A stretch of 64,000 nt of DNA from Takakia lepidozioides (Eukaryota; Plantae; Bryophyta). Below are positions 3,001-26,300 of the stretch, piece by piece. The stretch lies in assembly GCA_030704615.1 (NCBI GenBank), contig CM060733.1, forward strand, positions 28,086,001-28,150,000, read 5' to 3'. Position 1 is the first letter of the stretch. Each line of letters opens with the position of its first letter. Made by a program: the position numbers and the translations under genes. The notes under the pieces were generated by a model. That model did not search any database. It was not told the origin of the DNA and saw only the letters and a list, made by a program, of their open reading frames with translations.

Positions 3001-3237
3001 GGCATCAAGTGTTACGTCCGCTACCTGTGCTGTGGATCATGAAAATTGAACCTGAGTACGAGGTGGAGGCAGTTTCTTAAGTCGAGGAGGTTCAAGAACC
3101 GAGAAACGGAGTATCTCGTCAAATGAAAGGGCTATCATCATGTGGAGGCATCTTGGGTGCGTGCCTCAGAAATGGGAAACGCATCCGAGGCGGTTGTAGT
3201 TTTCGAAGGGCAACCTCAAAAGCGGAAGAAGCGTTGA
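15..3237 (+). pseudogene. Frameshifted pol (PR-RT-RH-INT-chromodomain) of family A
   Basis: The domains are spread over many short ORFs in different frames (15..302, 484..909, 1075..1341, 1253..1489, 1490..1819, 2070..2417, 2805..3080). Confidence 0.93.
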
Positions 3238-4135: not shown

Positions 4136-4870
4136 TATCGCGGCCCTTTGCCTTGAGGGCAGGGGGGTCGGGACACATAAGGGGCTGCCCCTGTGGTGGG
4201 GGCAGCGCCAGCGATAGGTATGGGGGGGCTGAAGCACCCTTGAGTGCCCAGGCACTCAAGGAGGCGGAGGCGCTCACTAGGTGGAGCCCGCACACCGGGT
4301 TGCGGTGGGGGTGGGGGTGGCTCCACAAGGGGTGGTGGTAGCTTAGCGGGACTTAGTGGGGGTGGCATAGGACTCACCATGGGGGCGGAGACCTCGTGGT
4401 GGGAGTCGTGGGGAGTCTTGGGACTCATCACGGTCCATAGGGGCCGTGGTGAGTGGGCCAAGACTCACCGTGACTCATCACCGGGAGTCGAGGGTTTTCG
4501 TGGTGGTTCGCCATAAAATGGCATGGCTGGTTGTGAAACCCCCGCAGACAGCTACAGAAGTATATATAAGGGGAGTAGTGACCCCGAGAACGGTGCAAGC
4601 CCGTTGGTGACCAAAAACTAGTGAGTAAGCGAGCGAGCCGGAAAGCGACCAAAGAGTGGGGAGCTGTTCCGGACTGCCATCTACCAAAGGGAATTCCACT
4701 AGGCCCAAATAGGTGGAGGGTTTAGTGGGAGAGCGAAGGGGGGACCGTTATGTCCCGGTGAGCAGCCGAAGCTCCAAGTTGGCCTGGCGGCCAGGTTGGG
4801 AGTCAGGCGCGCGCATCAAAGCGAGTAACTATGACTTGAAGGGGAGCTTACCGAAGTGAGGTGCGCGACA
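4136..4870 (+). repeat. 3' LTR of family A
   Basis: Termini T(A)TCGCG...CGCGACA, preceded by purine-rich GGTAGGGG. TATA-like TATATATAAG at about 4561. Homologous to the reverse complement of 27634-28361, which is followed by a tRNA-Met PBS. Confidence 0.9.
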
Positions 4871-5249
4871 CCTCGAGTATTTTATGAGTGTTCGTGTTTT
4901 AAATCGACGTCAAGCAAGATGGAGTATGTCACTAGCAAGGTTTGATTTTGTTATTACCTACCGTCCCGGACATCTTCAAGGAAAACTAGATGCTCTTTCT
5001 CGACGATTGTATCTTGCGCCAAAGGAAGGGGATGCAGCTTTTGACCAACAAAAATTCATTATTTTGAAACCAGCAAATCTCCAATTGAATATGCTATCCA
5101 TGTCCACCTATGACGATGCAGTGATCATAAAGGAGATTTAGGAAGCACTGAAGAGCGACCAATTTGCTACGACACTACGAAGTCAATTAAATCGACCTCG
5201 AGACAATCCACGTGTTACAAACGACTTTGAGTTCAAAGATGACTTATTT

Positions 5250-7876
5250 TGTAGTGTGAATGCAGGGGGGTGACATTGAAATTTTTGTTTTTACTCACTG
5301 AGATTCTGCATTTCTACAAAGGAAGGGCCCTGGTACCAATGTGAAAATAGGTTGAGTTGTCACTGTAATTTATTCCATACATGTTTCTAGGTTACATCAT
5401 GGGAACGATGGGGCACTCTTGGCCAGGATGAAAATGCTCAATTTATTTCATACATGCTATGGGCGGAATTCATCCCTGCCTACAGGTTATTTCATGGGCA
5501 CACTATGCTGATACTTTGCCAGGATGAAAGTGGCTAAGTCATGACCAGACGTATTTTCATCCGGAGGATGAATGGATTACATCCATGCTTACTGGATGAC
5601 TCCCAGGAACGAGGACGAAGGATCCAGTGCCAAGGATGCAATGAATTTGTGATTAACTCTGTTAATGAAACCTAGCACGTTTTCCGTTCGTGAAAATGGA
5701 TGACTTTCATCACTGGCGGTTACCCTAGAAACGCGGGACGAGGAAGACGAAGGGGAAGATGACGGGGGCTCTAAGCAAATGTTGCAAACAGTGGAATTGG
5801 CATGGCATTGTGTCAAGGGCGATTGCATCTACACTGGGGCATTCTGGCTTGCATTAAGGGAAGTTTTAATGTAGAGGATAAGGGCACAGCTTGGTAATCT
5901 GTGCAGCAGGGGAAGCGGTGCCACCATCTTCTTGGTAATGATCAATTTCTGGAGGATATACTTACAGGGAGATCGGTGTGGCATGCGATGGAGCAATCAG
6001 TTAACAGGCGGTGCCGTCGCTGCTATGGTGAATGGGTAGCTTAGGGCTTGCTGGAGGATAATCGTGCAGGGAACAGCTTGGAAGAGTTGTGCTCAAGCCA
6101 GGTGAAGGGAGGCGGTGCTGTCACTAATCTTGTGCACCCACTAGAGCCGCCATTGCCTTGATGAACATGATCATGGGAGGATGAGCTTGCAAGGAAAACG
6201 GCCAGCTGCCAGAGAACAGGGAGGTGGGGTTGCTGGCACAGTCAATGGAGAGTTAGGATGAGGAGCAGCTCGACATAATGAGCATCTGCCAGAGCGAATG
6301 AGGGATTGGCTTGTGGATGGTGACTCAGGTTATCTGTAAATAAGGAGGCAAAGAGTGAAATGTACAAAGCAAGAAGCTTTCAGATGATGACTGTCTTCTT
6401 GTTATAAGATCATATTAGATCTTAGGGTAGATTAGCAGAGATGGTGGGATAGGGTAATTAGTTGGTAAGCGACAGGGTTACTGCCAATGACTGAAGCAGA
6501 GCCGTCACGACTCACTGAACGCTTGAATCGACGAATATCTGAAAGGTAGAGTGGCAGAGCGATGACAGGATCTGACATGCATAGATCTTTGTTTTTACAA
6601 CGTGGCATCCAGACGACAAGAGGAGTTAGGGTAGCTGCTGACAGAGATGGTGAGGTGCCATTTCGGGCAGGCAATCCCACCGCTTCACCTGGAGTATAAG
6701 ACAGCTAAGTTCGTAGATGCATGGCTCTTCTCTCAGACTTAGGAATAGTGGCTTCTTTTTCACTTAGGAATAGTTGTTGTTGCTTGGACTTAGGAGCTCT
6801 CAAGCAAGACTGATGTAGGAGATAAGATTTTGAGAAATGGAATGGAGGTGGTCTGACTTCAAACTAGGGAGATTGTAGAGAGGATGTGAGAGGATGCATA
6901 TGTCCCTGGGGATATTGATTAGAGGGCAGATGCAGTCCCACCATAGTCACTGAGTGTATGATATTTCTTTTGTTTTAGATCAACTGTTTCCACTAGCGTG
7001 AATCTGGACCCAATGTTGCATTGAAGATTGATGTCAAATGTACATGCAATTTTGAGCACAGTAGAGCACAAACCAGTAGGATTAGCTGCCTTTTTAACAA
7101 TAGAAAGATGAGGGTGATGGTGTTTCATTGGAGAACTAGGGTATCCTGAATTTATGTGGCATGCATACATTAGAGGGATGAAGTGGAAAATTATCTTAAG
7201 TTGTTTAGTGTAGTTGCCTTACTGAAGCTGAAACCTAAAGTTTGATCCCAGAATGAAGGATTTAGTTTGGGAACTCTGTTGGTTCAAAGCTGAATGCAAA
7301 AATGTAAGGATGGGGTAGAATGTAGATATAGATAATGGGCTCTTTATCACTGACTGACAGACCTAAATTGTCTCTGAAAGCAATCAGAATGGAGGGCCTT
7401 GTTTGGGAAGAGAGAATGACCAAATAGGGAATGTGGGGCATCCTTGAGATATCAAATCACAAATTTTGTATCTGGTCTTGCTGGATGTGTTGCCTTGGTG
7501 TAATTGCACAGCATGTAGGAAGGGTGCAGTGTTCTACATGATACCCAAGGAATATTTTGTCATACAAGGGTGAGAAAAGAAATCTGGAGAGCTGCACAGA
7601 AACAGGAAGAACGAAGGGATAACCAGTTGTAAGCTGAGAGATAGAAATGGAGAAGCTTCCCAGTCCCATCCATGTTTTCTCTTCCGCTGCGGCATGGATG
7701 AGGGCATCTGGTCTCTGGTTACGAACAGTAAAGGGTCAATGATTGAGGATAGTGAGTTAGGGTAGCAAACTTGTCTTCACTAGGGTGTAGTGAGCTGGGG
7801 TAGCAAGCTTCTTTGCATTACGAACCAGATTTAGATTTTTACAGAAGGGATTCATGCCCTTCTTTTTCACACTACA
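5250..7876. mobile_element. 2.6 kb insertion with TGTAGTGTGAA...TTCACACTACA termini and ATTT 4 bp TSD (solo LTR or non-autonomous TIR element)
   Basis: Perfect 11 bp terminal inverted repeat. ATTT at 5246-5249 and 7877-7880. Excision restores GAC TTA TTT TAT TTC AAT GGA in family B pol. Confidence 0.88.
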
Positions 7877-8938
7877 ATTTTATTTCAATGGACTTCTCTA
7901 TGTACCTCCAGGACCTACACGACTTCGAATTCTTCAAACATGGCATGAAGCTGCAGGACATTTCGGCTTCAACAAAATAATGGAATTGATATCCAGGGAC
8001 TATTGGTGGCCGCAAATGTGGAAACTCGTGAAAGAATTTATAAAATCTTGCGACACGTGTGCTAGAGGGAAGGGACCACGACATCGACCTTACGGCCTTC
8101 TTCAACCATTACCCATTCACAAGGGTCCATGGTCATCCGTGTCTATGGACTTTATTACGGACCTTCCAATCTCCAAGACCACAGATTCAATCCTAGTTAT
8201 TGTAGATCGTTTTACGAAGATGACACATTTCATTCCGACGGTTACCGGCGAGGAAACTGCAAGACTCTTCCTTAAGAATATTTACCGCATTTATGGACTC
8301 CCGAAGGACATCGTATCTGATCGATGACCACAGTTCATATCAAATTTCTGGAGGGGATTATTTCACATATTGGATACTAAGATCAACTTTTCTACAACTA
8401 ATCATCCAGAGACTGATGGTCAAACCGAACGTGTAAACCAGATTTTGGAGCAGTATCTTCGCTGTACGATAAATTATCACCAAGATAATTGGACGGACCT
8501 TCTGTAATTGGCTGAGTTTGCCTACAACAACACTATACATTCTTCGACCCAGCAAACTCAATTTTTCTCCAATTATGGTCATCATCCTCGAGCAAACCCT
8601 TTCCACATGAAGACTGTTGGAAACCCTGCTGCAGAAAACCTTGCTACTCATCTTGCTACGATTCACAAGGAGCTTACATTCCACCTCGCAGAAGCTCAAA
8701 AACGATACAAGGAGTATGCAGATCAACGTCGCCAACTCCAACCCCAGTTCAAGGTCGGAGATTGTGTGTGGCTTCTTCGACGGGACATACAAACCTCGTG
8801 ACCATCAAAGAAGTTGGATTATCAACGCCTGGGCCCATTCAAAATTATTCGACAAGTAAATCCGGTCAGTTTTCGGCTTGAACTCCCACGAAGTATGCGC
8901 ATCCATCCAGTCTTTCATGTTTCATTAATGGAGTTGTA

Positions 8939-8968
8939 AACCCTATTTTAACTAATTCTGGACTTTTG
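8939..8968 (+). repeat. Left TIR AACCCTATTTTAACTAATTCTGGACTTTTG
   Basis: Reverse complement of 23276-23305 with 3 mismatches. Confidence 0.92.
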
Positions 8969-9299
8969 GCTTAAATCCGGACCAAACTTAATATGTATTT
9001 GAATTAAAATTAATTCAAATGTTAATAATGTCTTGGTTAGTAATATGTGATTGAACTTTGTGAGATTACAAGTGATGTCATACTTGCTTCAAAATGTAAC
9101 ATATAAGATGTCCATTTGACATTGAAGTGTTTGTGAAGTTGCAGTGTAACTGAACAATTCATTGAACGTCGATTGGGAAGTCGAATGATGTAATATTACA
9201 TTATGTTACGGTGGCCAGGCACAAGGTATAGGCCAAAGACAAGCTCAACATGGCCAAGGACGCGGAGGTCAGGGTGTTGACCAAGGCATGAACCATAAC

Positions 9300-10994
9300 G
9301 GACTCATTCCTCCAGCTATGGTACAGCCTTCTGCATGACTCTTGATGCCTCAAGTGCAAATCAAGCGCCCGCTTATGTGCGACCTGTTCGGAACTCATCT
9401 TAATCGACTTCTTGATCAAGTCCTTGAACATCTCGCATTCTGTGCACTTAGCAAAGGTGCTTCATGTTTTCCGAACCTCCACGTTAAGAAATATTCGATT
9501 CCGTATACGGCTTAGCTGGCTGCGAGACTCATTTCAAACCGAGCAGTCTGTTTGTCTGCACCCCAACTCCCCAATAATGTCAACGTCCACTGGGCAGTGG
9601 AGGTTCTACAAAATGGAAGAACAAGAAAACATGATGGCATCAAAAAGAATAAAATCATCCACAATATTTTGAAAAACGAAAGGGGACAACGAATAAAAGT
9701 CACCTCGTTAGACTCCTCTCGAATTCTTTTCCAGTTCATTTCGGGTGGCAAAATTCTCAAAGTATCCTGACGTCCCTCTCCAATGCAACGTGTTTTGTGA
9801 GGCATAAGGTCAGTATTGGCATTGATAATAGACATAATATTCCCCTCTGCCTGGAGTGTCCCTGGTCGCGGCCGCTTGACGCCACGATTTCCGTGGAAAG
9901 ATGACAAATAGCCCTCTTTACTGAGCTTTTTGTACTCCATGTACGTTGACCTTCCAATTCCGTGTATTATCCACCATGCTTTCTCACAAACATCAACACC
10001 TTCTATCGTAACATATCACATGCGCGATGACCCATCCATAATGTGAAGTCGTTTTGAAACATTCAATCCAAGTTCTCTTCTCTCATCGAATGACGAACCC
10101 CAAAATGCAGTACAAATTGCCAAGGTTTTTCTCCAATCAAAATACTGACAGCACTGAAGCTTGCACCAAGGTTTGCTGCTCACCGACCTCACTTCATCCA
10201 AAAGTAAGATTTTTCTTTCAGTTTTTTGAGTCCTCCATATTGGATGGATTCTTCTTCCTAGTAAAATGCATGTATGTTGCTTTCAATACGCCTGTACCAT
10301 GGTCATCATTCTCCATGTCACTGCATGATCGTAGGAAATTTTCGAGATCAACGGAGAGTATCCGGCCATTTTCAAGAAGTCTTGTTTTTGTTAACAGCCA
10401 TTTCACAATCGACATCAGTGAACCGGACTCTCCAGAGATTGTTCTGGTGACCAGAACCCCAACATCGTCCTCTCCGAGTTTGTCATTCAGAATGATCTCG
10501 TTAGGAATGCATGCCTGCATTCGGCCTTCGAACAAGGCGTTTCCGTCCTCCCCAAGAAGAAGACACTGCAAGTTTCTCCAACAATCTCTCCCCAGACCTG
10601 CAAGCAGATCCCCTTCAGTCTCACCGTTGGACAGAATATCATTGCTTTCAGTGCTTTGACATTGATAATCACTATCTTCTGTGATGGAATGACATCCTGG
10701 GTTTCTTAGGGATGCTGAATCCACAGTTTCATGCGTGCGAACAAAGGACACGTCCCACACAACTGGAGTCCCAATCACCTCCTTCAATGTGTCAGCATCC
10801 ATGTGTCGATAAGACAGAGGACAGGAGCTGAATGCGTCATCACAAAAGATCAGGGTAACTGAAATGGTGGACGAACACAAGTGGTGTCCGTGGCAAGTTC
10901 CATCCCTAGAAACATTCAGGCAATCTCCTGAGGCAACAACTGAAGGAGATCCAGGAAGCGACAGAAACACACTTTGGCCTACTTGGAACCCCAT
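9300..10994 (-). pseudogene. Truncated transposase-like gene: two tandem Tnp1/En-Spm-associated-like domains plus a C/H-rich N-terminal half; catalytic core absent
   Basis: Reads MGFQVGQ..CHGHHL..TLKEVIGTPVVW, then WCKLQCCQYF, VCEKAWWIIHGI, FHGNRG, DLMPH. A GT-AG intron spans 9556-9703, followed by FAKCTECE..HLRHQESCRRLYHSWRNES and then unrelated sequence. Frameshift at about 10215 and an in-frame TGA at 10016. The family call is from motif recall. Confidence 0.7.
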
Positions 10995-11499
10995 GAAGTT
11001 AGTAACCTCCACTGGGCAGTGGAGGTTCAGTAAAATCCTATTGCAGGATTGAAGATTAACTGAAGGAAAGAACGTCGTGCCACCGAAAGGAGAAACTTTA
11101 AGTATAACTTTTTCGACGGTTTAGAATGAGAAAAACAATATGGATTGAAAAAGTAAAGTCAATGTTTGGATCTACACTGGGACTGATGAAACACATTGGA
11201 ATTAAATTGGAGTATGAAGGCGGAGTATAGACTACATCGATCTGAACTGTCAGATGAAGTCACAAATGCCAACCTCCACTGGAGAGTGGAGGTTGGATGA
11301 TATCTGTTGATGAAATCAACCACATGGATGAACAATGGATAATGAAGAAGCCCTCTATAGATGAAAAATTGATTCTATGGATGGATGAATATTAATGTGG
11401 CGACTGCCCAGTGGAGGTTTGGGAGTAACTTTAGACAAACAAAAGGAAGTTTAGCTGGTGCACATGGAGAGTACACAAAAAAATGAGAATCATACTATC

Positions 11500-13320
11500 C
11501 TACGTGAGAAATGTGCAGTTGACATCTGAGACTAAGGAAGCAGGGAGAGACTCAGAGGCTGCTTCAGAAGTACCCTATGGGCAGAGTGGTGCAGGACAGA
11601 CAAAGAGATACACGTTGTCCAGAGAGGTGCAGGATGTCCAGAGAGGTGCGTGAGAGAAAAGCAAGTGAGAGGTTCAAAGTGGGAAGTTGGTGTTGTGTGG
11701 AGTCGGACGTTATATAGAGGTGACATGTAATTTTCATCTTTGAATCGCTCCAATGGCAGTGTGGTATGCTTTCTCTCCCGGATCGATTGTGGCCACCGTG
11801 GATTAAGGCGGAATCGAACGGCTTATTTCATTCGCGAAATCACAGTTTCATTGAAAGTGTGCACAATTTTCCATTTATTGACAGCAGCCATTGTCACATT
11901 AATTATGGAACAAACGATAACAGCCGCGATCAGACTGAATTCTATCGTACTTGTACGTTAGTAGGACTACAAGTCTGGCATCATAATCGTGCGGCTCTGA
12001 CAGCAGACTATGGAATAAGCGTGAAGGATGTCGATTCTGACAAGTGGCTTGGAGAAATGAAGTCAGGCGGCTAATCGCCACCACTTATTCTGGAGTGCAC
12101 ATTAACAATCGATCATTATAATTAGCTGGGAGGAATCCGGAGGTGAACCATAAAGCACTTTGAGATTGTTCTGTTTATATTTATCGTGTTGTTACAGTGA
12201 ATAAAACACTTGGGCAGGGCGGGGCATTTCATGCCGGTGCATTGCATTGGACAGCGAGAGCGGTGCATTACAGGTGTGCGGAATGCTTTGCCGTGCATTG
12301 CTTGCTTGCACATGTTTAATGTAGGGATGGACCCCTCGTGTCGAGTATCCCTCGATAAATGGGCAGTCCCTATGGTGGCTCTGGACCTTAAATCGAGGAA
12401 TGCCCGACACGAGGGGCCATCTACTATCCTTAAAGCCGTATGTCACATGGCACTTGCGGGTGTTGTCAAGGAATATTGACGCCTGGCGGCTAACAGCCGA
12501 AAGTGATTGTGGACGGCTCATAATGAGACAATGATTATAGAGTGTGAGGAATCCGTAGGTACAGCGCTGTGTCCTCTGGCAGATTGAGTTTGAAACGACT
12601 GCCTAGGCGTGTCACATGGGTGGTCACATGTGCGTTTGGGGCGTGGGTTAAGGTTTGTTGGCATCGAATCTATTTTAAGATTTTTGTAAGCGTGAGGGTT
12701 GCAGAGTCTGATCAATGGCGTCATTACAATCATTTCGTCCTTTTTTCATTCGTCTATCCAGTCGTCTGTCCAAACGTGTATGCATTCGTGGAACAAAAGT
12801 TGAACTAATTTCATCTGTGTGGATGGACAGTATTAATGTTAGTTTGCGTGGATGGGGCAGAACATCCATTTGGGCCGCGCGACCGTTCGATTTTGGACGG
12901 AGGCGATGGTTCAGATTATCCTTGAAGGTCGCTTATAAGGGGTCCGCTCTTTGACCCCAGCCTTTGGGCTTCCCATTTTCTACGCGTAAGCGCTACGCGA
13001 GTGAGAGCTTAACAGTTGAGAGAGGAGAGCGTGAAAGAGAAGAGTTTTGGAGTTCGTTTTGCAGCGACTGGACACTGGAGCGTGGAGAGAAAGAAAGCAG
13101 ACTTGGCCGAGTGCAGAGAGAGGAGAGGGTAAAAGGTGAGAGAGTGAAATAGGCGAAATTTGAAGAGCGGGGAGGAGAGACCGGACAGTGGCGAGTGGAG
13201 ATTGGCGAGTGGAGAGGCGAGAACACAGTGCAATTACCGGCAGGCGGAGGTGCGTAAGAGAGTATCAAACAAAGGACTGTGGTTGCAAGGGCACCAAAAT
13301 GGCCGGCACAAGCAGGTACA
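11500..13320. promoter_or_regulatory. Putative divergent promoter and 5'UTR region between the transposase (-) and cargo (+)
   Basis: TATATA at about 11711 with a CT-rich leader on the minus strand. TATAAG at about 12934 followed by a GA-rich leader (13000-13260), a donor-like CAG|GTAC at about 13315 and a T-rich intron-like tract. Confidence 0.4.
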
Positions 13321-14375
13321 ACATTGAAAACTCCCTCTTTTCGTCTTCTGTTTCATGTTTTGTGTTGGCCTATTCTGAATTCATGTGTTGGCCTGTTCTC
13401 AGTTTTGTGTTGGCCCGCTCTCGATTCATGTGGCCTGTTCTAGATTCAATTCGTTTGGATCCTGCTTCATTCTATGCTACACTGCACTGTCTTCAGTGCT
13501 TCAGTCCGTGCTTCGGTGCACATTAGGTTTTTGTTTCATTGTTTGCTTCGTTGTTTGCTTCAATCCCGTTTCATTCTCTGTCAATTCATTTCACTCCTGC
13601 TCCATTTTGTGCTTCAGTACATTCCCGCGTCATTGCTTCACTATTGTTTTTCAATTCACCGATGGTTTGTAGGGTGGTTTTGTGTGCAATTGGGTTTGTG
13701 TGTGCTTGTTCTGGTCGATTAGGGTAATGGTTTAGGGTGGCGGGAGATTACCGTGGTGGTTGTATTGCTTGTTTTGTTCATTGTGGTGGTTTTTTTAGGA
13801 CAGTGGTTTCGAAAATGCCTGGATGTTTATTTCTCAACCGTTTTCTTGATCCCCAAATCCAGCGTTAGTTTGTTCTTGTCAATCAATAGTTGATGCATTT
13901 CTTCCGATTCAAATTCGATTCTGAATGGAAATTTTCATTTCTTATCCAATTTTGTCGAATTCGGCAATTCTGAAAAAACCACGATAGCCTAGTGTACTTG
14001 TATTCTACAGTAGACATAGGCTAACAGTAGGCTTCGTGCAGGCCAGAGTAGACTATTCGTAGACCCATGTCATGCACATGAGGAACCACAAACTGGAACT
14101 CCATTGCCCAGTGGAGGTTCGCGTGAATTCTGTATGGGGAAGCTGAATGGCATTTTTTCAAAGTAAAGACGAAATCGGATAATTCCGGGAAAATTGAAAA
14201 TCAGTTTGAGACGACGTGGGAACGAGTGATGGAATCATATGTGTAACATTGTAAGTGTGACACATACTTTCCAACGAGACTGGGATACGATAATTGGGAA
14301 CCTCCGCTACCCAGTGGAGGTTCGATATTTCTTTGGGTCAACCAGTTACACACTTTGATTAGTTTTTATGTCAGA

Positions 14376-15154
14376 ATGATAAAGAGGAACGAGGTTGGGG
14401 AACCGGTGTCTGACGATGAGTACAAGACCGCCAGATTAAATTGGAGCAAGAGACGGTGTTCGGTAGATGTGATGGAAGCGGACCATCCAGATCAAAAACA
14501 TGGTGTTTCGGAACCAGATGAAAAATCCAGTTGGGGGTCTACCGAGCCGAACAAAGTGTCTGTCAATGACGAAAATGTGATTGTAGAATCCCCGCGGAAC
14601 GCATCCGAATCTCCGAACAATACACCTGAAGACATCTGTAAGGATTCCCTGGAGGAAATAAGAGAAAGCGTTCATGTAAACAATGATGTCAACGGATCTC
14701 CTGCCTACTCCCAAGATTATCCGAAATACATCCCTTTAGACTATTCCCCGGACACATTGGCGGCGATACGAGTAACCGTTTTTGGATATCCAGCATCTCC
14801 GGGTTACTCGCCAGCATCTTCTGAATCCACAACAGGATCTGAAGGATATTACCCTCCAAACTTCCTCCTGGACACTGCAACGAGGGGGGAGTCCTGGAAC
14901 TACTGGACGTCTCCGGATCTCTAGGATACTCCCCTGCGTCTCCTGATAGTATCACCGGATCCCCAAAATATACACCTCCAGACTATTCACCTGATACACT
15001 CAGAGAGATAAGAAGGAGTATTCTGTGGGTATACAATCTAGAATTGTCTGAATATAGTGCGAGAAGTTCCTTAGTATATTTTGGACGAATTAGGTTCGAA
15101 GATTTCTATTGTAGATTTGTCATGTTTCAGGATGATGTACTCAATGGCTCCTGA
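14376..15154 (+). pseudogene. Cargo ORF with three ~40 aa Y-S-P-rich repeats (Pol II CTD-heptad-like), one frameshift
   Basis: SPAYSQDYPKYIPLDYSPDTL; SPGYSPASSESTTGS; after a frameshift at about 14885-14920, GYSPASPDSITGSPKYTPPDYSPDTLREIRR. Confidence 0.6.
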
Positions 15155-15326
15155 GCCTCATTTTCATTAAAGTTTTTTTCTACAACATTTGTAAAATATG
15201 GAGGATTTCCCATTTGATTTAGAAAGCCTCGTACATACAAACCTCCACTGTCCAGTGGAGGTTCTCATTTCTGGAATGATGGATGCTAGTAAGAGAGATC
15301 CTGTTATTTGATTATCTAATGAATTT

Positions 15327-18300
15327 GTGTTTGGTTGTAACAGAAGACATCCTACACCACCAGATTGCGTCCCGGGATTGATTGGAGATATTTGTGGCGC
15401 ATTTGTATGCCGGAAGTCCTCACATTTCAAAACTGAGCATACTGCAATTTTTGAGCTTAACCCAGAGGTGACAGATTGGGGTATCGTGCCTGTCAGTACA
15501 CCTCCTGATCACAAACTGTCTTTTCATTACAGAAGTCTTGGAGTAATAACAGACTTAAAATACGCAGAAGCTCTCGATATAGAGCTTGAATCTGAAGAGG
15601 AAAACCCGATGTTGGTTTTGTTCCTGCAGGAGGATGCGAGAACCCCCAGGACGTTCGGTTTCAAAGTGGAGGTGGGTCGTCTGAACAAGTCGTTGATGAG
15701 TGAATGCGTTGCACTGGGTTTTAGATTTCCAGACGAGGGCTCAGTATTTACCAACGTAGGTTTGTCGAGGGCCTGGAGTATTTTTCTGGATCTTCTGCAC
15801 GCAATGGGGAATGACATTCGCAAGAAGCGAGCACTACAGGAAGCATCAAAGCAGAAGAAGGGAAAACGCAAATCGTTGACAGCCGGCAATGATGACAATG
15901 AGACCGGGACTTCCGCAGGTAAGAAGAAACAGAAGGAGGATCAGGATCCAGCATTGATGTCAGATAACAAGAGACCTAAAGCTGGGGAGATTTTTGACAA
16001 GGAAAAATGCGAGAAGATGGAGGAGAGGCTCACGAAGGAATACAATGATGTATTTCCATTCGGATTTGAGAGTACCTTCATTGTGAAGGTTTCCATGATG
16101 GAACTAGCTCCAAGGAGCATGGTTTACAGGCCGTTAAATATCAAGCATAAGGATGAAGTGAAAGCGCGACTCTTCCAACTTCATTTGTTCGACTCCAAAC
16201 ATCCGGTGTATCTTGCGCCAATCAACCCTTCCAATCCAGAGAAGATTGCTGCATCGCGACCGAAGCAATGGAAGGAGATGGACGTATCAAGGTTCTTCGT
16301 AATTGGTAGACAACACACCATCGTGGCAGCAAATGTAATGGACTTCATTTCCTCCCAGACCTCTCTTTTAACGAACCTCCACTGGGCAGTGGAGGTTGGT
16401 GTTGAACTACAAAATTGGATATGTCCCCACACTTTCAACTCTCTCATCCATTTTACATTAACTGTAGCAGGAACTTCTCGAGGATCTTGCCGACAGCAAA
16501 CTGAAGGAGTACTACCGTGAGTGGCCTGCGAAGATTGTATGGTCTATCGATGAACAAAAGCTCCTGAAGTTGTCAAAGCTCCTCAACGATTCCAATAAGG
16601 CGCAAAAGTTTGATACAACAATGCCGGAGAAAGTTGAGCATGCGCAAATGTTATTCAACCTGAGGGGGAAGCCAAAGAAATACAACGATCACACCACCAA
16701 GTCCGAGACGAAACAATGGAAGGTATGCATTTATGGAATCAAAATCTACTATTCACATTCATTTTATGCTAAAGAATACTTCTGTTGTCGGAGTGACAAC
16801 TAATTTATCCCTAGATGAATGTGCAGGAGTTCATGTTTGCCTGTCATTTGATACTTGAAATGGGTAGCATTAAGGAGGCAATGGTCCTGGTACTTTGCGA
16901 CGACGACGTTTGGGAAGATCTGGGAAGATGTTTTCAAAAACTGGGAGCAGGGAAAGCTACTCGACCCACTTGGGATACAGTACAAGGGTGAACAACAACA
17001 GCTCACGAAATCTGCTATCGCAAAGCTGCAAGGGTTGAACAGATGGCAGCTGATAAAAGTTGTGCAGAAAATCCTAGACCTGAAATTGACCATTCGAGAT
17101 TACAAAGGTCAAGACAAATCAATTCAAGGCATGAACAAGTACATAGACGACATGAAAATGCGCCGGTTTATTGTCGACGATGTGATGGAAGTGTTGGGGT
17201 GGCCTCATAGGAGCAAACAGTGCACGGAACCGTACACTAAGGACGAGTGGCGTGAAGTGAAGAGAAAGTACCACTTCAATAAGGCAGAGTTCTCAACATT
17301 TAAAGACAAACAAGGGACGGATTACATCCAAAGCAAGATCAAGATGAACATGGAGACAAAACCACTCACGGCCGCTTTTGTTAAGTACGTCTCCTCCATC
17401 AAGAAAGCTTATGAGGATAGAGAGGATGCCATGGGGATTATTTCAGCGAGTTTCAAGACTCATTACGCTATCAAGGGTGGAGAAACATAAATTCGCCGAT
17501 GCCAAGTCCCGTCTGCAACTCGCACCGAAGAAACGGTTTGACAACATAGCGATGGTGTTCGTCAATACAGTTTCTGAAGACGACTCTATCGTATTTGAGT
17601 CCAAGGATTATGTGAACATACTGAAGGCCTTTGTGGCTCAGAAAATGAACACGAGTGCTTTTGTTTTCTTCTCGACGCAACCGTCCTCGGCCAATCTGGT
17701 CTCCTACATCCAAAATGGTCCCGGAAGAACATCATATCTTGTCCGTCAGGGATTTTATGTTCCGGGAGAGTATGAAAATATTTACAAAAACAGCACGAAG
17801 ACTTTCTCTCGGACTGTACTGTGCCTGGACTATGTTTTTCCAGCGACACCTGAGGAGATGCAGAATCCGGACGAGCACATCTCCATCGTACTCTTAATCG
17901 AGCCAATACAGCCGATTCTGGAAGGGCCTTCTGAGAAGCCATGAGCTTTTGAAGAAGAGTGCATGACTTACAATCATGAGCTACGAGCTGACACATACGA
18001 CTATTTGGCCTCCCTGTTTTGTCGAGACGGGATGTCCGCTGTCAACATCTTCGGAGGTGTGATGTTGACGTACGCCCTTCATGTAAGTGTAAAACCTTTT
18101 TGCATTTTATATACGAATTTTACATTTTTGATCCAACACGTCCTCTGTTTTACTGACTGGGTTTATCTGCAGGCAAGAAACATTCGAGTGCTTGACATCA
18201 ACCACTCAACCAAAAAAAAATTTGCAAAGGAAAAGTTGAAGCGAATTTTAAGAAGCTTCAAATTGAGAATGACAATGTTGTTGAAGAGGTTGACGGCGGA

Positions 18301-18480
18301 GACGATGATGAGGATGAGGAGGAGGAAGATGAAGACTTGGAAGAAGGAGGCGGACATTCCGAACACGGAGAGGAGGACGAGGGCATCGATGGTAACGGGG
18401 ACAACGAGGGCCACGATGGTGACAATGCTGACCGTTGGGAGGCTGGACACCTAGATATGATTCAGGACTTCAGAACTTAG
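15327..18480 (+). pseudogene. Spliced cargo gene: basic NLS-like stretch, ParB/Sulfiredoxin-like domain, helical region, degenerate N4C/N6A DNA methyltransferase-like domain, acidic tail
   Basis: VYRPLN..V..; FFVIGRQHTIVAA (compare GGQHT/DGxHR); WPAKIVW..LSKLLN after intron 16335-16470. Further GT-AG introns at 16723-16827 and 18083-18171. ELRADTYDYLASLFCRDGMSAVNIFGG..ARNIRVLDI resembles beta-class MTase motifs X-I-II. D/E run at 18280-18430. Several frameshifts. Confidence 0.6.
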
Positions 18481-18699
18481 TCATAGTTTGGTATTGAGAA
18501 CATCACCCAAGACGTTGTGGTGTGGTCCACAAGGTCGTGCTTCTGGATGGGGATTCGTCGAGTTCAAGCGAGAGAACTAAGAGTAATCCTGCTTCACCAT
18601 CAAGGGGTGCGGAGGCGAGCTCAATCGAGGTGGGCGGCAATATTGTTGGGAGTGCAGAAGACCGGTTCAAACTTGTAGAAGGGGACGAGCCGGCGCCAA

Positions 18700-18895
18700 T
18701 GTCCCCGTCTCCCGCCAAAGAGAGGGTAGAGAGAGCGAGAACAAAGAGCCCGTGTCCCACAAAAGACAACGGACACAGAGGAAGGACTAAGAGCCCGTCC
18801 CCCGCAAAAATGGACAGTGGTGACAGAGGCGGGACTAAAAGCCCGTCTCCCAAAAAAAACAGTGGAGGCAGAGGCCGAACTCAGAGCCCAACTCA
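18700..18895 (+). repeat. Coding tandem repeat (~45 bp x4) encoding RGRTKSPSP-like units
   Basis: RARTKSPCP, RGRTKSPSP, RGGTKSPSP and RGRTQSPTH in ORF 18522..18944. Confidence 0.8.
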
Positions 18896-19439
18896 CTCTC
18901 AAAGTGTCTCCCAGCATGTCAATTTAGATGTAGGTAACAAATGACACCTGGAGATTTATGGTGTCTTTAAGCAATATAAAGGGGACAAATTGTGTGTATT
19001 GCATCTGGTTGTGTTCTGGTTGTGATTTGCCAATACCTGATCTGTATCTTGATATTCCCACCTTCTTGAACTTTACATGTGACTGATGGTAAGAAATCTT
19101 GTATAGATCCATGAACGGAAATTGGAGGAAATCGCACAAACCCGGACAGAATCCATCGCGACTCAAACAGTGAGGAGGCAGGTGGACTTAACAATAAGGG
19201 CCGGCTCAACTGATCCGGTCATACAAACAACCTCCACTACCCAGTCGACGTTGTGAGATGGAGGAGATGTGTCGGAGATGGTCGTTGCTCACCGCGAAGG
19301 AAAAGAGAGCGAGCAGCAACACCAGCAAATTCGAAATCCCTCCCCGAAACGGGTATACACCTCATAACCATCTTAGCTATGTTCTTCTTTTTCCTTCTTC
19401 TAGTTTTCAAAATAAATTAATTGTTCTGTTATTCCACAG

Positions 19440-20173
19440 GATGATATGATTCACCCTCCAATCGACTATCACAAATCTGTGAACCCACAAGATTGGTATC
19501 ACCTCTCTGAGGGACCGAAAGGATGTCGACCAGGATACTACGTCCTGGTTCTTGATGTTATCTTGGTGAGGTTTACCTCCGAGATGGCCCGAGATCCCCT
19601 CCCGCAACCCATCCTTGTGTGTGCGCTGGAAAATTCAAGCTTGCAGTCCAAAATGGGTTGGACGACTTCTTGAAATGGGTCCTTAAGCATTTTAAGGTCT
19701 ACTTTTGGAACACTGGACCGTTAGAAAATGTCCTGGATATAGGGCTGGCTTTGTTTGGAAGAAGGTTTTACAAGGCCAGGGAATTCAGCAATGAGAATTG
19801 CGTGAAGCATAGACAGACGTTCAGTGCCGAATGGCCCAAATATCCGAAAGCGCCAATATATCTTAAACGTCTCTACGACCTTTTCACTGTAGACGACCCT
19901 GTAGCGTACAAATCAAACACACTTCTTATCGACACTGTAGAAAATATGTATAATTCGTACTTGAACCCAAAGTCAATCGGTATCTTCCTTCCAAAATATA
20001 AAGCGCTCGTCGACCCATACAAGGACAGGTTTCTTCTGGATGAACTCAAACCGCACCTGGAAGAGTTGCGGTTATCCGGAAAAGACGCTGATATATTCAA
20101 CGTGGAAAAACCCATAGGATGTCCACTGTATAATGACCCAAAGGTCAAATGCCTCTTGCTATGGGATTTGTAG
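19440..20173 (+). pseudogene. FCP1/NIF-type HAD phosphatase-like domain, copy 1 (frameshift at about 19625)
   Basis: YVLVLDVILV; GLDDFLKWVLKHFKVYFWNTG; IYLKRL; SNTLLIDT..YLNP. Preceded by a splice acceptor at about 19439. Confidence 0.72.
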
Positions 20174-20349
20174 TGGCAGGTTTATCTTAGAAAACAAAAA
20201 TTTCATGACGCTTCCTTGGAACAGATTGAAATGTAGATGGCTGCTCTTGATTTTCCTGAACCTCGACTGTCCAGTGGACGTCTCCAAATGTCAACCTGTC
20301 CTTGGTTTATCTTGATTACTACCTGAGTGGATGTATGAATTTCTCACAG

Positions 20350-21080
20350 ATTACGCACCAGTTTGTCCAGTTGGGAAATGATTGCACTTGATAATATTTG
20401 ACCTGAACGGAGTTTTGTGCAAAGTCTTGAAGCACCATAAGAGCTACAGTGTCCCCCGAATGTCCGAGACAGACTATAGGATACCAGCTCTTGTTGGATT
20501 TCGACTTGTCTATAGGCGGGAAAAATATCGTGAGATGTGGACAGAGTTGAACAAACATTTCCGTCTAGGTATATGGAGCTGCATGATGTACAAGAACTTG
20601 CAGCCTATCCTGGACTTTATGCTTCGGGGTCTTTCTCAGCCGGAATTTGTTATTTCTCAAGAAGATTGTATCTCTTGCCCTACTTCTGTCCACCCTCAAT
20701 TTATATCAAGATACGACCCGCCGAGTCTGTTCTTGAAGCCATAGATGACGGTCTGGCAAAGATTTGGTGGTCAGTATAATAGGAGTAACACTCTACTCAT
20801 TGACGATTCTGCTATTAAGTGTGTGTTGAACCCGCCTAAATCCTGTCTGATTCTAAAATCGTTTGAATCCGTTGAGACGGACTCTTGCTATCTCCAAAAG
20901 GTTCTTCAGAAATATTTGCTTGAAATGAAGAAATCTCGCACCGTTTCCAGTTATCTTAGGGAAAAGAGGATAGGACTCAAGCCTTGTCAGAATGTTTCCA
21001 CCGATCCCAAGTTTAAGCCTCTCCTGGATTATGTTGATGATTCTAATTACGGGAATCTCCAATATGATGCTTCAAAATAA
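20350..21080 (+). pseudogene. FCP1/NIF-type HAD phosphatase-like domain, copy 2 (one in-frame TAG at 20742)
   Basis: LIIFDLNGVLC; VYRR; HFRLGIWSC; SQEDC; LFLKP; YNRSNTLLIDDSAIKCVLNPPKSCL. ORFs 20382..20744 and 20745..21080 are contiguous in the same frame. Confidence 0.85.
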
Positions 21081-22682
21081 AGATTTTATTGATCAACCAC
21101 GTCTGTGATTCAATGTTTATTTTTGATTGGTTTTTTTAAAGGTTGTATTGTTTTTCTATAAAAAGTTGTGTACTGTGATTTCCTTTTCAATCTGAATTGA
21201 CATGGAATTGTTTGCTATTTCCTAGTCTCATTCATGCGTTTCTCCACCCTATACCATCCCGATCCTCTGAGATACATGCCTTCTCCGAAACTCGTCTCGG
21301 GGGCTTCTTCCGATAACCTCCCGTTTCTGTACATTGACCTTATAAGTTCGTTTCTGCAGGTTCATGGCGATGCTGCTGATGCCAACTTCTTATCGAGATC
21401 TCCATTGGAATCCTCCATATCAGAAATTCGTCCACAGAGGGACAACAATTACACTACTGTTGAGATTTCTGTCATCGACAGTGAAGCATCATCCAGGGAC
21501 TTGGCTTCCCTTCAATTGCACGACCCACTTCTTCAGTCCATTCCTGAAAAAGATGTTCTGTCGCATGATCGTTTAGGATTGAATGTCGAAGATGGAAGCC
21601 AACTTGACAAATGTGTAGGGGATTTCGTGGACCTCACTCCACAATCCTCACCCTCCATGTTAAGTGTCAAGGGTCAGAAATCTACCTCGAGAATGTCATC
21701 CGATGAGGAAACGGCTGAGGCTGCGGCTCCGCAACACACTGTTGCCTCTCTTCCCTCCTTCTCTCCCCAACATGAAGGTTGGACAGCCCAAATCAGAAGG
21801 AGTCAGGTAAATTACTTATATCTGAATTCTAACTCGTCCTTTTGTTTTCCTTAGTACTGGGTATGATGTTCTTGTTTTACTCCAGGCCAGAAAATCTGCG
21901 AATTGTGACCTTCCTGTCAAACGACGTCTTCATTCGAAATCTGTTCCGAGGTAATCCCTTCATTACGTGTGAATTCCATTCAGGATGTGGAGTGCTCAAG
22001 GGACAATTTCCATTCCGTTCCCCTTCTCCGCAACCCTTTCGACGAGGACAAGGACGAGACTTCAATTGCAACTTCTTGGCTTCCCGACCCTGCAGTATTG
22101 GCGCAATAATCTGCATCGAGGAAGCGAAATAGGGCCCCCAAACCATTTCCATCTCTTCTACAAATCAGTTCCACCAGAGAAAAGTCCTTCGTCAGAGACA
22201 AAACAAACTCAAGGAAGAAGAGGAATACCTCGGATATACCGGGGTATCGTCAAAACACGTCCGTTCGAATGTCAAGCTCGCCAGCGAGACTTTCCAATAA
22301 GGCGACATCGGTATTATTCGATGTCATTTCTCCACTTTCTTCTCTTTTCTGTTCGTTTGGTTATGCACTAATTGCCTCCATCTTTTCTCAACAGGCGGGT
22401 ATGCAACACGATACCTTCATCAATTTCCCTCCGTACAAGGTACTTTCCTGAACCTCCACTTGGTAGTCGACGTTCCTCTTCTTAGCAATATTAACCCTCA
22501 TCTTCAAACATTCCAAGCCCACAACATTGTGCAGTATTTTGCCATTTTCTACACAATCGTGTTGATCTTCCAAACACTCAATCATTCTGGGTCGTGTATA
22601 TTTTTTATGGTAGAAACACTAATGTCAGTGTGTGATTAACCTGCTCAGGATAACTTTGTCTCTCATCCTTTACATACAACAG

Positions 22683-22895
22683 CGGGGAAGAGGAAACATA
22701 TGTTGTTAATTTTGAGTGTCAACGGACTCCTCTGCTACCGGCCACCCCCAACCGGCGGTGAACTGTTTAAGGAGAAATTTCGTTTCAGGAATGTAACACT
22801 TCAAGTTCCTGACAGACCGTTTGTGGTGCCTTGGCTTGGAGTCTTGGAGTTTCTGGACCTTGCATTGAAGCATTTTCACGTGGCCATTTGATCTC
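22683..22895 (+). pseudogene. FCP1/NIF-type HAD phosphatase-like domain, copy 3 (3'-truncated)
   Basis: LLILSVNGLLC..GVLEFLDLALKHFHVAI*S aligns with the N-terminal halves of copies 1 and 2. Confidence 0.72.
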
Positions 22896-23275
22896 AAATA
22901 AAATATGAATGTTTCATATCATCAATCAGATCCCGATAGACTCGTTTTTTCCATGTTGTCATGTTCATCACATGCCATCATTGTTTAATATTTGGTTCTG
23001 CCATTATTCCATATTTGTTTGTGTATGTCATTTTGGATATCGGAGCTCTCATCATTGTTTGATTCATTGCATCCCCCCATTCCTTTTAATGAATGTCAAC
23101 TTGGCAGATTCATCTAAGACGACAATACATACTTGTATTTTTGCGTAGAATGTGTGGAGGATTACATAATTTGTTGTTATATAGTGCACAAATAGTCAAA
23201 TAATTATAGATATATCTCTTTATTTCTATTATAGATTATAATTATTCATATATCTTGTATTATTTCTGGACCAAA

Positions 23276-23305
23276 CAAAAGTCTAGAATTAGTTAAAATA
23301 TAGTT
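23276..23305 (-). repeat. Right TIR
   Basis: CAAAAGTCTAGAATTAGTTAAAATATAGTT, the inverted partner of 8939-8968. Confidence 0.92.
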
Positions 23306-26300
23306 TGTATCATCCATCGAATATTCCAGGGAGAGTCTCCGTACCACCTCCATCAATCGAAGTCAATCAGGAAATTGAGTATGAAGTCGACGAAGTCCTA
23401 AACTCTCGCATCAAGTATAAACGTCTTGAGTATTTCATACATTGAAAAGACTACGACATTAGCGAACGAACGTGAGAACCTTCATCCAACCTTGCCAATG
23501 CATCTGACAAAGTCCAAGAGTTTCATCAACGATATCCAGCTAAGCCCCGAGCTACACGTCAATAAGACGTCACAACGATGATGTCAGCCAAGTTAGCTTC
23601 AAGGTGAAGACTCCACATTCAATGTACCTGATACACGCTAAGGAGGGAAGAGCACCACACATCAGTATATATAACTACACTTCCAGTACTCTTGCATCTT
23701 GTATTGGCAGTATGGAGTCACAGGAACCAGATACATTGGAGTTGTCGCTTACCCAGCTACCAGATCAGCCGTTCCGACTCTCACGATCTTCAACATCACG
23801 CCGACGCTCTCGAGACGATGGGCCATCAATGCAACACGTACTTCCTCGTCCGGACCCTGTATGACGGCAAGTGGAGCCTACTCGAAGTCTGATAATTCTG
23901 TTGGAGGTTGGTTCTTCAAGAGTGCCGCGGTGCGCTTGGCTCCACCGTGGCCCGCAAGCGGACCATCGTGGTATTATCTCAGGAGACTATCTCTGAGCCC
24001 TCCCTTCGACACGTAGAGACGCTTTTGCTTGTACCGGAGCAGTCCATTTTGCAAGTGAAACTGCGATTTAACCCCATCCTCAAGTCCCGTATCACGGACT
24101 TCGCTATCTTATCTTTCCGGTAAGCCTTCCGGATCTTCCTTTGGAGCGCCGACACATAATTCCGCAAGATTTGCTTCACCACGGAATTCACTCTTTCCGT
24201 TTGGCCGTCCGTCGTAGGTCGGAAGGCGGTGCTCATCTTGAGCCTCGTCCCCATCTTCTTCCAAAGTGCCCTCCAAAATTTACTAGTAAACTTTGGATCG
24301 CGGTCCGAGACAATATCCTTCGGGAGTCCATGATGCTTGAAGACGTGGGCAAAGTAAAGTCGCCCCGTCTCCTGCACCGTTGCCGTCTCCTTGGTGGGAA
24401 TGAAATGACCCATTTTATTGAACCTATCCACCACCACCATGATTGCATCGAATCCTTGGCATAGCAGTCATGAAATCCATCGAGACACTTTCCCAAGACC
24501 CCTCTGGAATCGGCAAGGGTTGTAACAGCCCCGTTTGCTTTTTGTACTCGCTCCGGTTTTGTTGGCATGTGGTGCATGTCTTGACATACTCCTCGGCCTC
24601 CTCCCTCAGTTTGGGCTAGAAATACTCTTTCTTCAAGAGTGCCACGGTGCGCTTGGCTCCACCGTGGCCCGCAAAGCGAGCCATCGTGGTATTCTCTCAG
24701 GAGACTATCTCTGATCCCTCCCTTCGACACGTAGAGACACTTTTGCTTGTACCGGAGCAGTCCATTTTGCAAGTGGAACTGCGATTTAACCCCCATCCTC
24801 AAGTCCTGCATCACGGACTTCGCTATCTTATCTTTCCGGTAAGCCTTCCGGATCTTCCTTTGGAGCGCCGTCTCGCCCCTGTACACCAACATGAGCTGCT
24901 GCTTTCTACTTAAAGCGTCGGCCACCACATTGTCCCGTCCCGGTTTGTACTGGATATCCACGTCGAACAAAATACTTCACCGTGACATTGTCCGTGAACA
25001 CCTTCACCGGATTGGAACCAACATAGTGGCGCCAAAGCTCAAGGCAATGCACCACCGCCTTCATTTTTTTTTCGTGCGTATGCCACCGTTGCTCCACTTC
25101 ATTTAGTTTCTTACTTTCGTTAGCCACTGGACGTTCATCCTGCATGAGCACACCCCCAATTGCGAAGTCCGACGCATCTGTATGAATCTCAAATGGACGG
25201 TCGAACTCCGGGATTTTTAGGACTGGAGCTTCCGCCATCCACTGCTTCAACTCAGCAAAAGCTTGGCCACAAAATGTGTTCCATACCCAGACTTTGGACT
25301 TACACAGAAGGTCCGACAGCAGCCCCGCGATCTTGGCAAAATTTCTCACATACTTTCGGTAATAGGAGGCGAGTCCTAGGAAAGATCGCACTCTCGGGAC
25401 CGAAGTCGGAGGCTCCCAGTCCAAGATCGCCCTCACATTTCTGTCATCCATTTTGATCCCATCCTGTGTAATCACATGCCCAAGGAACTCCACTTTTGTG
25501 ACCCCGAATTTGCATTTTGAAGCTTTGGCATACAACTTCCCTTCCCGCAATTTCTAGAACACCCTTTTGAGGTGCTCCAGGTGCTCTTCCTTTGTTTTCG
25601 AGTACACCGAGATGTCGTCGATGTACACGATCACAAAGTCATCCAACCACTCCTGGAAAAGGCTGTTCATTAGCGTGCTAAAGGTCGTGGGTGCATTGGT
25701 GAGCCCAAAAGGCATCACCAAGAAGGCGTCCCATCCTTCTTGTCTGCGAATAGCACCGGGGCTCCGTAGGTTGACTTACTCGGCCGGATGTACCCCTTTG
25801 ACATTAGATCTTTGAGCTGAGCTTTCAATTCGACCAACTCTCTGTGGCTCAACCGGTAGGGCTTGGCTAAGTAGTGCACGAAACCTTGACAATTGAACAT
25901 AACTCGGGCTTCCACGGAGTTGTCCGAAGAGTCCATCAGCCGCTTGGTAGAGGCAGTGGTCGCCAAGACTTGCAAGGTAGGCAACTACTCTTGTGAGTTG
26001 TATCAGGAAACTGGCGCCTTGCGTAAAGGGAATCAGTTATTGTTCGTGAGTGGGATAATTTCCGGAACTAACGTGTCGTTGTTGGTGGACGTAGGAGCGT
26101 CGAACTCCTTCATGACACCGGCAACAACACGAAAGTTGGGGCTCCCGACAAGTGACGTGGGGGCCTCTATTGAAGTGCATTCTGCCAAAGGAGAACCACA
26201 ACTGGCGACGAGGTTGGCGTTCGATGTTCCTCTTCAGCTGGGGAGTTGGGAGGGAGGTGAGAACTTCACCCTTTGCGAGATCGATGGAGTGGATCTCATT

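What the first reader, a model, noticed from the sequence alone, without database searches (positions are those of the whole stretch)
8939..23305. 14.4 kb cargo transposon bundling ParB-like/MTase-like, CTD-like and triple FCP1-like modules with its own palindromic sites
Seen: 30 bp TIRs, a TGTA TSD and exact restoration of the host integrase frame, so everything inside moved as one unit. A transposase-like gene (-) sits back-to-back with about 9 kb of intron-containing cargo (+). Known: 4 bp TSDs fit Sola-type DDE elements; FCP1/SCP folds act on phospho-Ser-Pro, including the Pol II CTD; bacterial ParB dimers bind palindromic parS sites. Inference: the cargo looks functionally coherent rather than like random Pack-type capture. 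It may be a self-recognition or anti-silencing module that binds element-specific palindromes and engages the Pol II phosphorylation machinery. I know of no described plant TE with this combination. This copy is decayed.
Basis: partly seen in the sequence, partly recalled or inferred. Interest (0 to 1): 0.93.

Follow-up and report, generated by a model that had tools for sequence, protein, structure and literature searches.

The report
Giant plant transposon with self-recognition cassette
This is a decayed copy of an apparently undescribed family of giant plant DNA transposons that, across distant hosts, keep the same set of accessory genes and a family-specific palindromic DNA word, which suggests each family recognises and regulates its own copies.

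Summary
Confirmed: 30-bp TIRs (27/30), a TGTA TSD and restoration of the host Ty3 integrase frame. Eleven 24-bp palindromes lie in introns; none lies in the other 49.6 kb. The cargo is not random capture. A complete 21-kb relative from a peat-moss metagenome has similar TIRs, a 4-bp TSD, a full DUF7869 (Sola-like) transposase and the same divergent ParB-like, methyltransferase-like and FCP1-like genes. The modules show purifying selection (dN/dS about 0.3-0.6). Three families carry three different palindromes, in upstream arrays and partly in matching introns. Reads indicate many copies in this organism and one spliced transcript from a diverged copy. This copy has lost the transposase catalytic core. 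Corrections: the ParB fold was not confirmed (language-model and motif leads only); the methyltransferase lacks DPPY; the FCP1 domains lack DxDxT; the CTD-like stretch holds two heptad-like words and was not found in relatives. Pol II engagement is therefore unsupported. Best model: the accessory protein binds its own family's palindromes and regulates the element, like VANC or KorB (about 50%). I found no paper describing it. Other first-reader notes flag the same module elsewhere in this genome.

The parts
8935..8938 (.). left target-site duplication TGTA
8939..8968 (+). left TIR (30 bp, 27/30 to the right TIR; resembles the TIR of the moss relative)
9297..10978 (-). N-terminal half of a DUF7869/Sola-like transposase, with an intron and frameshifts; catalytic core deleted below about 9297
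   Evidence: 37-51% aa identity to moss transposase exons; DUF7869 E 4e-21 in relative L010
9582..9605 (.). 24-bp palindrome in a transposase intron (moss copy L010 has its own palindrome in the matching interval)
11004..11419 (.). three palindromes (11004, 11271, degenerate 11396) in the inferred first intron of the transposase gene
11700..13000 (.). divergent promoter region: TATA-like words near 11712 (-) and 12935 (+), long hairpin 12326-12421
   Evidence: sequence; hairpin z -7.0; promoter role inferred
13299..13315 (+). inferred first coding exon of the cargo gene (ATG), in frame with the next exon
   Evidence: sequence, GT-AG sites; inference
14096..14322 (.). two palindromes (14096, 14299) in cargo intron 1; other copies carry the more perfect form
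14375..15017 (+). Ser/Pro/Tyr-rich exon with a ~33-aa peptide repeat ('CTD-like'); frameshift near 14883 that some other copies lack
15240..15263 (.). palindrome in cargo intron 2
15344..16334 (+). exon with an unassigned N-terminal part, a basic stretch and the ParB/Srx-like core (G-x-Q-H motif)
   Evidence: 19 homologs, about 100 by profile; ParB-like only by ESM features and motif order
16374..16397 (.). palindrome in cargo intron 3
16471..16722 (+). second part of the ParB-like domain; followed by a 104-nt GT-AG intron whose position is shared with L001 and L003
   Evidence: intron spliced in run X7
16827..18082 (+). helical domain plus beta-class amino-methyltransferase-like domain without DPPY; frameshifts near 16912 and 17487, stop at 17942
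18173..18931 (+). acidic stretch and 45-bp repeat encoding Ser-Pro/Arg-rich units
19229..19252 (.). palindrome in the intron before the first FCP1-like domain (moss copies have their palindromes in the matching interval)
19440..20169 (+). FCP1/NIF-like domain 1 (frameshift near motif I)
   Evidence: Pfam NIF E 5e-6
20259..20282 (.). palindrome in the 180-nt intron between FCP1-like domains 1 and 2
20350..21080 (+). FCP1/NIF-like domain 2 (motif DLNG; internal stops)
   Evidence: Pfam NIF
21201..22380 (+). low-complexity Ser-rich exons between FCP1-like domains 2 and 3, unassigned
22451..22474 (.). palindrome in the intron before FCP1-like domain 3 (matching position in moss copies)
22683..22909 (+). 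FCP1-like domain 3, N-terminal part only (motif SVNG, no nucleophile Asp)
23276..23305 (-). right TIR
23306..23309 (.). right target-site duplication TGTA

Best explanation
Shown: a non-autonomous deletion derivative of a family of giant (14-21 kb) cut-and-paste transposons with a DUF7869/Sola-like transposase, ~30-bp TIRs starting AAC, and 4-bp TSDs. The family carries a fixed, divergently transcribed accessory cassette: a ParB/Srx-like domain, a helical domain, a pseudo amino-methyltransferase, and two or three FCP1-like domains with non-canonical or dead active sites. Each sequence family has its own 20-26-bp palindrome in upstream arrays and introns. Inferred: the accessory protein binds its own family's palindrome as a dimer. 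It acts in trans on all copies that carry that word, keeping them transcribed or unsilenced (VANC-like) or tuning the two divergent promoters (KorB-like). The enzyme-derived domains most likely serve as binding or decoy modules rather than catalysts. Protein and palindrome diverge together, which keeps families independent.
For: Complete 21,084-bp relative with TIR 28/30, TSD TTCA, full transposase and the same gene order. Second relative L010 has the same back-to-back layout. Seven moss copies share one right terminus with different flanks. L001, from another sample, has open ParB-like, MTase-like and NIF frames in order. dN/dS 0.32-0.60 among decayed copies; shared variants rank third > first > second codon position in 7 of 8 modules, and third positions lead by transversions alone in the same seven. 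Three different palindromes in three families with no cross-occurrence, 0 in shuffles and 0 in flanks. Arrays phased at about 45-50 bp upstream of both genes, with sites in matching introns although the word differs. Other copies carry the more perfect palindrome and lack several frameshifts; one spliced RNA-type contig. VANC precedent for motifs in introns and intergenic DNA (PMC5735166).
Against: No binding data. ParB fold not confirmed: no Pfam, NCBIfam or PDB hit, AlphaFold pLDDT 47, no fold match, no profile match to P1/N15-type ParB. No helix-turn-helix was demonstrated. The transposase could be the binder. Only three families have a clear palindrome; in L001 only one perfect site was found and the array was not significant. 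Deamination of methylated cytosines can inflate dS. The RNA label of run X7 is a guess.
Confidence: 0.52

Rival explanations
1. The palindromes are binding sites of the transposase (its N-terminal part), which activates or assembles cognate copies; the cassette is selected for another job.
For: Transposases can be sequence-specific activators of cognate copies (bioRxiv 10.64898/2026.08.24.746577, abstract). The moss element has one site near each end. Transposase and palindrome also diverge together.
Against: The palindrome is unlike the TIR. Most sites are deep inside the element and cluster around the cassette. Unchecked notes say the same cassette and palindrome arrays occur with Mutator-type transposases in this genome, which would tie the sites to the cassette.
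Confidence: 0.18
2. The accessory protein binds the palindromes but works in transposition itself: it loads, spreads or bridges along the element to compact it and bring ends 15-21 kb apart together, like a ParB-parS complex.
For: Very large element size; sites dispersed end to end; ParB bridging and spreading are established knowledge.
Against: The CTP-binding GxRR motif is replaced by G-x-Q-H. The densest arrays sit at the two promoters, which fits transcriptional control. It does not explain the MTase-like and FCP1-like domains.
Confidence: 0.17
3. A modification system: an active amino-methyltransferase is targeted to the palindromes and writes 4mC or 6mA to mark self, as in prokaryotic ParB-methyltransferase loci.
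For: MTase-like fold by ESM features and weak profile match; ParB-MTase loci in phages (PMC4738411); eukaryotic 4mC enzymes exist (PMC8885841).
Against: The catalytic DPPY-type motif is absent in every member aligned, including the open-frame L001; motif I is degenerate. Some other families in this genome are said to have a separate amino-MTase (unchecked notes).
Confidence: 0.08
4. Pack-type neutral capture of host gene fragments, with the palindromes as chance repeats or a nested MITE.
For: This copy is decayed and non-autonomous; FCP1-like domains have host relatives.
Against: Same order and orientation across hosts at 25-50% aa identity, shared intron positions, purifying selection, and sites confined to the elements.
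Confidence: 0.03

Closest known systems
Sola superfamily DNA transposons (described 2009; summary in PMC10741241)
   Same: 4-bp TSD, TIRs, DDD-type transposase in relatives; some Sola exceed 15 kb and Sola occur in the moss Physcomitrella. Those large elements may belong to this family (inference, not checked).
   Different: I found no description of an accessory cassette or internal palindrome arrays for Sola. That DUF7869 equals the Sola transposase rests on my own knowledge and was not tested against Repbase.
VANDAL/VANC anti-silencing system of Arabidopsis (PMC5735166)
   Same: Transposon-encoded accessory gene; family-specific motifs in introns, intergenic and terminal non-coding DNA; motifs amplified as tandem arrays; peptide repeats in the variable part of the protein.
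   Different: Mutator transposase and 8-9-bp non-palindromic motifs in VANDAL; here a DUF7869 transposase, 20-26-bp palindromes and unrelated protein domains; no functional data here.
KorB of plasmid RK2 and ParB-parS (own knowledge)
   Same: About a dozen dispersed palindromic sites within one mobile element, and a candidate ParB-fold protein encoded in it.
   Different: Eukaryotic, intron-containing; no ParA; GxRR motif absent; fold unconfirmed.
Phage ParB-methyltransferase (ParB-Tls) loci and eukaryotic N6A-MTase clades (PMC4738411)
   Same: ParB-type domain linked to an amino-methyltransferase; inactive MTase domains are known in DIRS1 retroelements.
   Different: No land-plant DNA transposon with this fusion appears in the passages retrieved; catalytic motif lost here; FCP1-like domains added.
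Fungal Starships (DUF3723 accessory gene; own knowledge)
   Same: Giant elements with conserved accessory genes; DUF3723 was an ESM neighbour of the ParB-like core.
   Different: Starships move by a tyrosine recombinase without TIR/4-bp TSD of this type and carry variable cargo.
Pack-MULE / Pack-CACTA
   Same: Non-autonomous TIR element with gene-like interior.
   Different: The interior here is fixed, old and under purifying selection.

Membership tests
Sola superfamily | 4-bp TSD and terminal inverted repeats | tested here: met
   TGTA and TTCA TSDs, TIRs 27/30 and 28/30
Sola superfamily | DDD-type transposase core | tested here: met
   In relatives only: DUF7869 E 4e-21 and three Asp-bearing motifs; deleted in this copy
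Sola superfamily | Transposase groups with Repbase Sola1, 2 or 3 | not testable with these tools
   No Repbase; the 2009 paper is not held
Pack-type elements | Variable, recently captured host fragments evolving neutrally | tested here: not met
   Conserved order and purifying selection
VANDAL/VANC | Mutator transposase with long TSD | tested here: not met
   DUF7869 transposase, 4-bp TSD
VANDAL/VANC | Family-specific motifs concentrated in non-coding parts of the element | tested here: met
VANDAL/VANC | Encoded protein binds the motif and lowers methylation in trans | not testable with these tools
   needs EMSA/ChIP and methylome data
ParB/parS | ParB/Srx N-terminal fold | tested here: inconclusive
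   ESM neighbours DUF3723, DUF6551, ParB_N at 0.87-0.90; no HMM, fold or profile match
ParB/parS | CTP-binding GxRR motif | tested here: not met
   family has G-x-Q-H-[TSM]; true ParBs have GSRRR
ParB/parS | Repeated palindromic cognate site | tested here: inconclusive
   palindromes present; that they are cognate to this protein is untested
Beta-class N4/N6 amino-methyltransferase | Fold and motif order (IV before I) | tested here: inconclusive
   ESM PF01555 0.91; NCBIfam E 0.09; hhalign E 0.0015-0.006, above all shuffles, driven by the motif I region
Beta-class N4/N6 amino-methyltransferase | Catalytic (D/N/S)PP(Y/F/W) motif | tested here: not met
   DTTS, NTVS, SITH, SITN at that position
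FCP1/SCP phosphatases | NIF domain | tested here: met
   Pfam PF03031
FCP1/SCP phosphatases | DxDx(T/V) catalytic motif | tested here: not met
   DLNG in inner domains, SVNG/NVNG in the last
FCP1/SCP phosphatases | Acts on phospho-CTD | not testable with these tools
   best NCBIfam lead is HAD-IIID, far below cut-off
RNA Pol II CTD | Tandem YSPTSPS heptads | tested here: not met
   two isolated words with 4-5/7 matches; not found in five relatives
Starship | Tyrosine-recombinase captain gene | tested here: not met
   DUF7869 transposase with TIRs

The most novel reading that the evidence does not exclude
A eukaryotic ParB/parS-like self-recognition system. A prokaryote-derived ParB-methyltransferase fusion, joined to FCP1-like modules, has become a transferable regulatory cassette used by more than one transposon superfamily in non-seed plants. 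Each family evolves a private protein-palindrome pair to escape silencing or to organise its own copies.
Probability: 0.35. Interest if true: 0.93.

Novelty: new variant of a known kind. Interest (0 to 1): 0.8.

Why it matters
Known transposon anti-silencing regulators (VANC, TnpA) come from flowering plants. This would be an independent and probably old solution built from bacterial-type parts. The cognate sites are long palindromes that differ between families, so protein-DNA specificity and its coevolution can be tested directly by swapping pairs, and moss is an easy host for such tests. It may also explain what fills the unexplained >15-kb Sola elements of mosses. Orthogonal protein-palindrome pairs that act on plant chromatin could be useful tools.

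Tried and rejected
AlphaFold on the L001 MTase exon (single sequence, pLDDT 33) and on the ParB-like alignment (pLDDT 47): unusable; the fold search gave best Z 3.4. Pfam, NCBIfam, PHROG and PDB sequence searches on ParB-like pieces: nothing. Profile comparison with a shallow P1/N15 ParB set: no match; this is weak as a negative. Bacterial genomes, viral contigs, plasmids and phages: no relatives, no palindrome. The CACTA genes beside L004 and the PHD-GNAT gene beside L030 look like neighbours, not parts, so no second transposase type was verified. The L001 palindrome array was not significant against shuffles. A 5-bp TSD (TTGTA) also fits but puts the TIRs out of register; the moss element confirms 4 bp. 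Five paper searches on the combination found no description.
Full report
Observation. The element is real. TIRs match at 27/30, TGTA is duplicated, and removing the insert restores one reading frame of a Ty3 integrase-chromodomain region. A 24-bp palindrome occurs 11 times inside, never in the other 49.6 kb and never in 200 shuffles. All sites fall in inferred introns. Pfam finds NIF (FCP1-like) in two domains; the third is a truncated N-terminal piece. A PPR-DYW gene, chromodomain Ty3 and copia elements and the relatives below point to a non-seed land plant (inference).

Copies in this organism. Contigs of DNA run X1 cover all of 13000-18900 (2,031 laid). Summed depth is about 2,000-10,000 against 41-86 per listed contig, which suggests tens of related copies, though the tool warns this is not a copy number. 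Most depth lacks the extra base at 16912, some copies lack the breaks at 14883 and 18220, and they carry more perfect palindromes at 14098-14104 and 14306. Run X7 (RNA by guess) holds a 5,983-nt contig of a diverged copy in which the 104-nt GT-AG intron 16723-16826 is removed; that joint is not listed in the two DNA runs. Short overhangs from these contigs differ from the window mostly at synonymous positions (read by eye).

Relatives elsewhere. The ParB-like exon found 19 and then about 100 homologs, none with a Pfam domain. L001 has open frames in the order ParB-like, helical plus MTase-like, NIF, and the frame ends at the same W-K intron position as in the window; L003 has W-T at that position. 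Most hits lie on JGI metagenome contigs of 31-34% GC that I recall as peat-moss samples (memory, unchecked). L010 and L022 carry a transposase on the opposite strand, 37-51% identical to the window's remnant and continuing into DUF7869. Joining the overlapping loci L022 and L178 gives a complete element of 21,084 bp with TIR 28/30, TSD TTCA and a TIR resembling the window's. Seven copies end at the same right terminus with different flanks. Homology shows the window's transposase is cut at about 9297 and its last FCP1-like domain near 22909, so this copy is non-autonomous. L027 and L032 have three FCP1-like modules, the L010 group two.

Selection. Among decayed moss copies dN/dS is 0.32-0.60 across modules, and dS is saturated between subfamilies while dN stays near 0.27 for the ParB-like exon. 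Shared variants rank third > first > second codon position in seven of eight modules, and third positions lead by transversions alone in the same seven. Neutral Pack-type capture is rejected.

Palindromes. The moss group has a different ~26-bp palindrome centred on GGCGGCCGCC, eroded by C-to-T changes. L010 has 25 sites; the complete element has 22 inside and none in its 8 kb of flank; five copies have none in 17 kb beyond their ends. They form arrays spaced about 45-50 bp upstream of both genes, and sit in the intervals before the first and last FCP1-like domains, as in the window. L003 has a third word, eight copies upstream and in the intron. No family carries another's word. Kept positions with a changed sequence suggest a protein-site pair that coevolves (inference).

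Domain identities. MTase-like: ESM features of L001 point to PF01555, NCBIfam gives a weak DNA methyltransferase hit, and the family profile matches beta-class viral enzymes at E 0.0015-0.006, above all shuffles. DPPY is missing in every member. ParB-like: ESM neighbours are DUF3723, DUF6551 and ParB_N at lead level, and the order of motifs fits by eye, but folds and profiles failed and GxRR is replaced by G-x-Q-H. FCP1-like: DLNG in inner domains and a conserved Asp-less last domain. CTD-like: a ~33-aa repeat with two heptad-like words, not found in five relatives.

Mechanism. Most likely the accessory protein binds its family's palindrome and controls expression or silencing of cognate copies in trans (0.52). 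Rivals: the transposase is the binder (0.18); a role in compacting or pairing the ends (0.17); an active DNA-marking enzyme (0.08); neutral capture (0.03). Architecture, conservation, selection and site specificity are shown; binding and function are inferred.

Prior knowledge. Sola elements have 4-bp TSDs, can exceed 15 kb and occur in Physcomitrella (PMC10741241), so the transposon itself may already be catalogued. VANDAL/VANC is the closest functional analogue (PMC5735166). ParB-MTase links are known from phages and some algae (PMC4738411). No paper in the library describes this cassette; subscription journals are largely missing from it. Other first-reader notes report the same module many times in this genome, with Sola-like and with Mutator-type transposases; these are unchecked, and I could not verify the Mutator link.

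Method note. Database searches were run exon by exon by reference, and the joined spliced model was left out. One window exon was read with X at stops in local scripts. A majority consensus of moss transposon copies served only for local alignment.

Verdict. A new variant of a known kind (giant Sola-like transposon) with an undescribed, conserved accessory cassette and family-specific palindromes. Interest 0.8.

Noticed in passing
window:12326-12421: Long hairpin (z -7.0 against shuffles) midway between the two divergent promoters; role unknown.
   Followed up: partly
window:18704-18889: 45-bp tandem repeat encoding Ser-Pro/Arg-rich units after an acidic stretch; like the YSP repeat, a fast-evolving part of the cassette.
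   Followed up: partly
window:9474-9482: A lone palindrome half-site near the inferred splice acceptor of the last surviving transposase exon.
   Followed up: no
window:12481-12498: One weak match to the moss-type palindrome in the intergenic region; may be chance.
   Followed up: no
window:16335-16470: In the X7 contig only 26 letters are missing across this palindrome-bearing intron, so it appears retained or differently placed in that copy.
   Followed up: no
window:39824-49600: Nested copia retrotransposons with paired LTRs (about 44850 and 49300; about 29670 and 44290).
   Followed up: partly
window:57372-59966: Intact PPR-E-DYW RNA-editing gene (864 aa).
   Followed up: partly
window:900-1001: Perfect 50-bp tandem duplication inside the host Ty3 reverse transcriptase region.
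   Followed up: no
L004:4300-6050: Large inverted array of telomere-like AAACCCT-type repeats upstream of the cassette in a moss relative.
   Followed up: no
L008:5300-6300 and L016: Further palindrome variants related to the moss word; candidates for tracing stepwise site evolution.
   Followed up: partly
L001:38-340: One perfect palindrome with ~11-bp arms and several degenerate neighbours upstream of the open-frame cassette; not significant against shuffles.
   Followed up: yes
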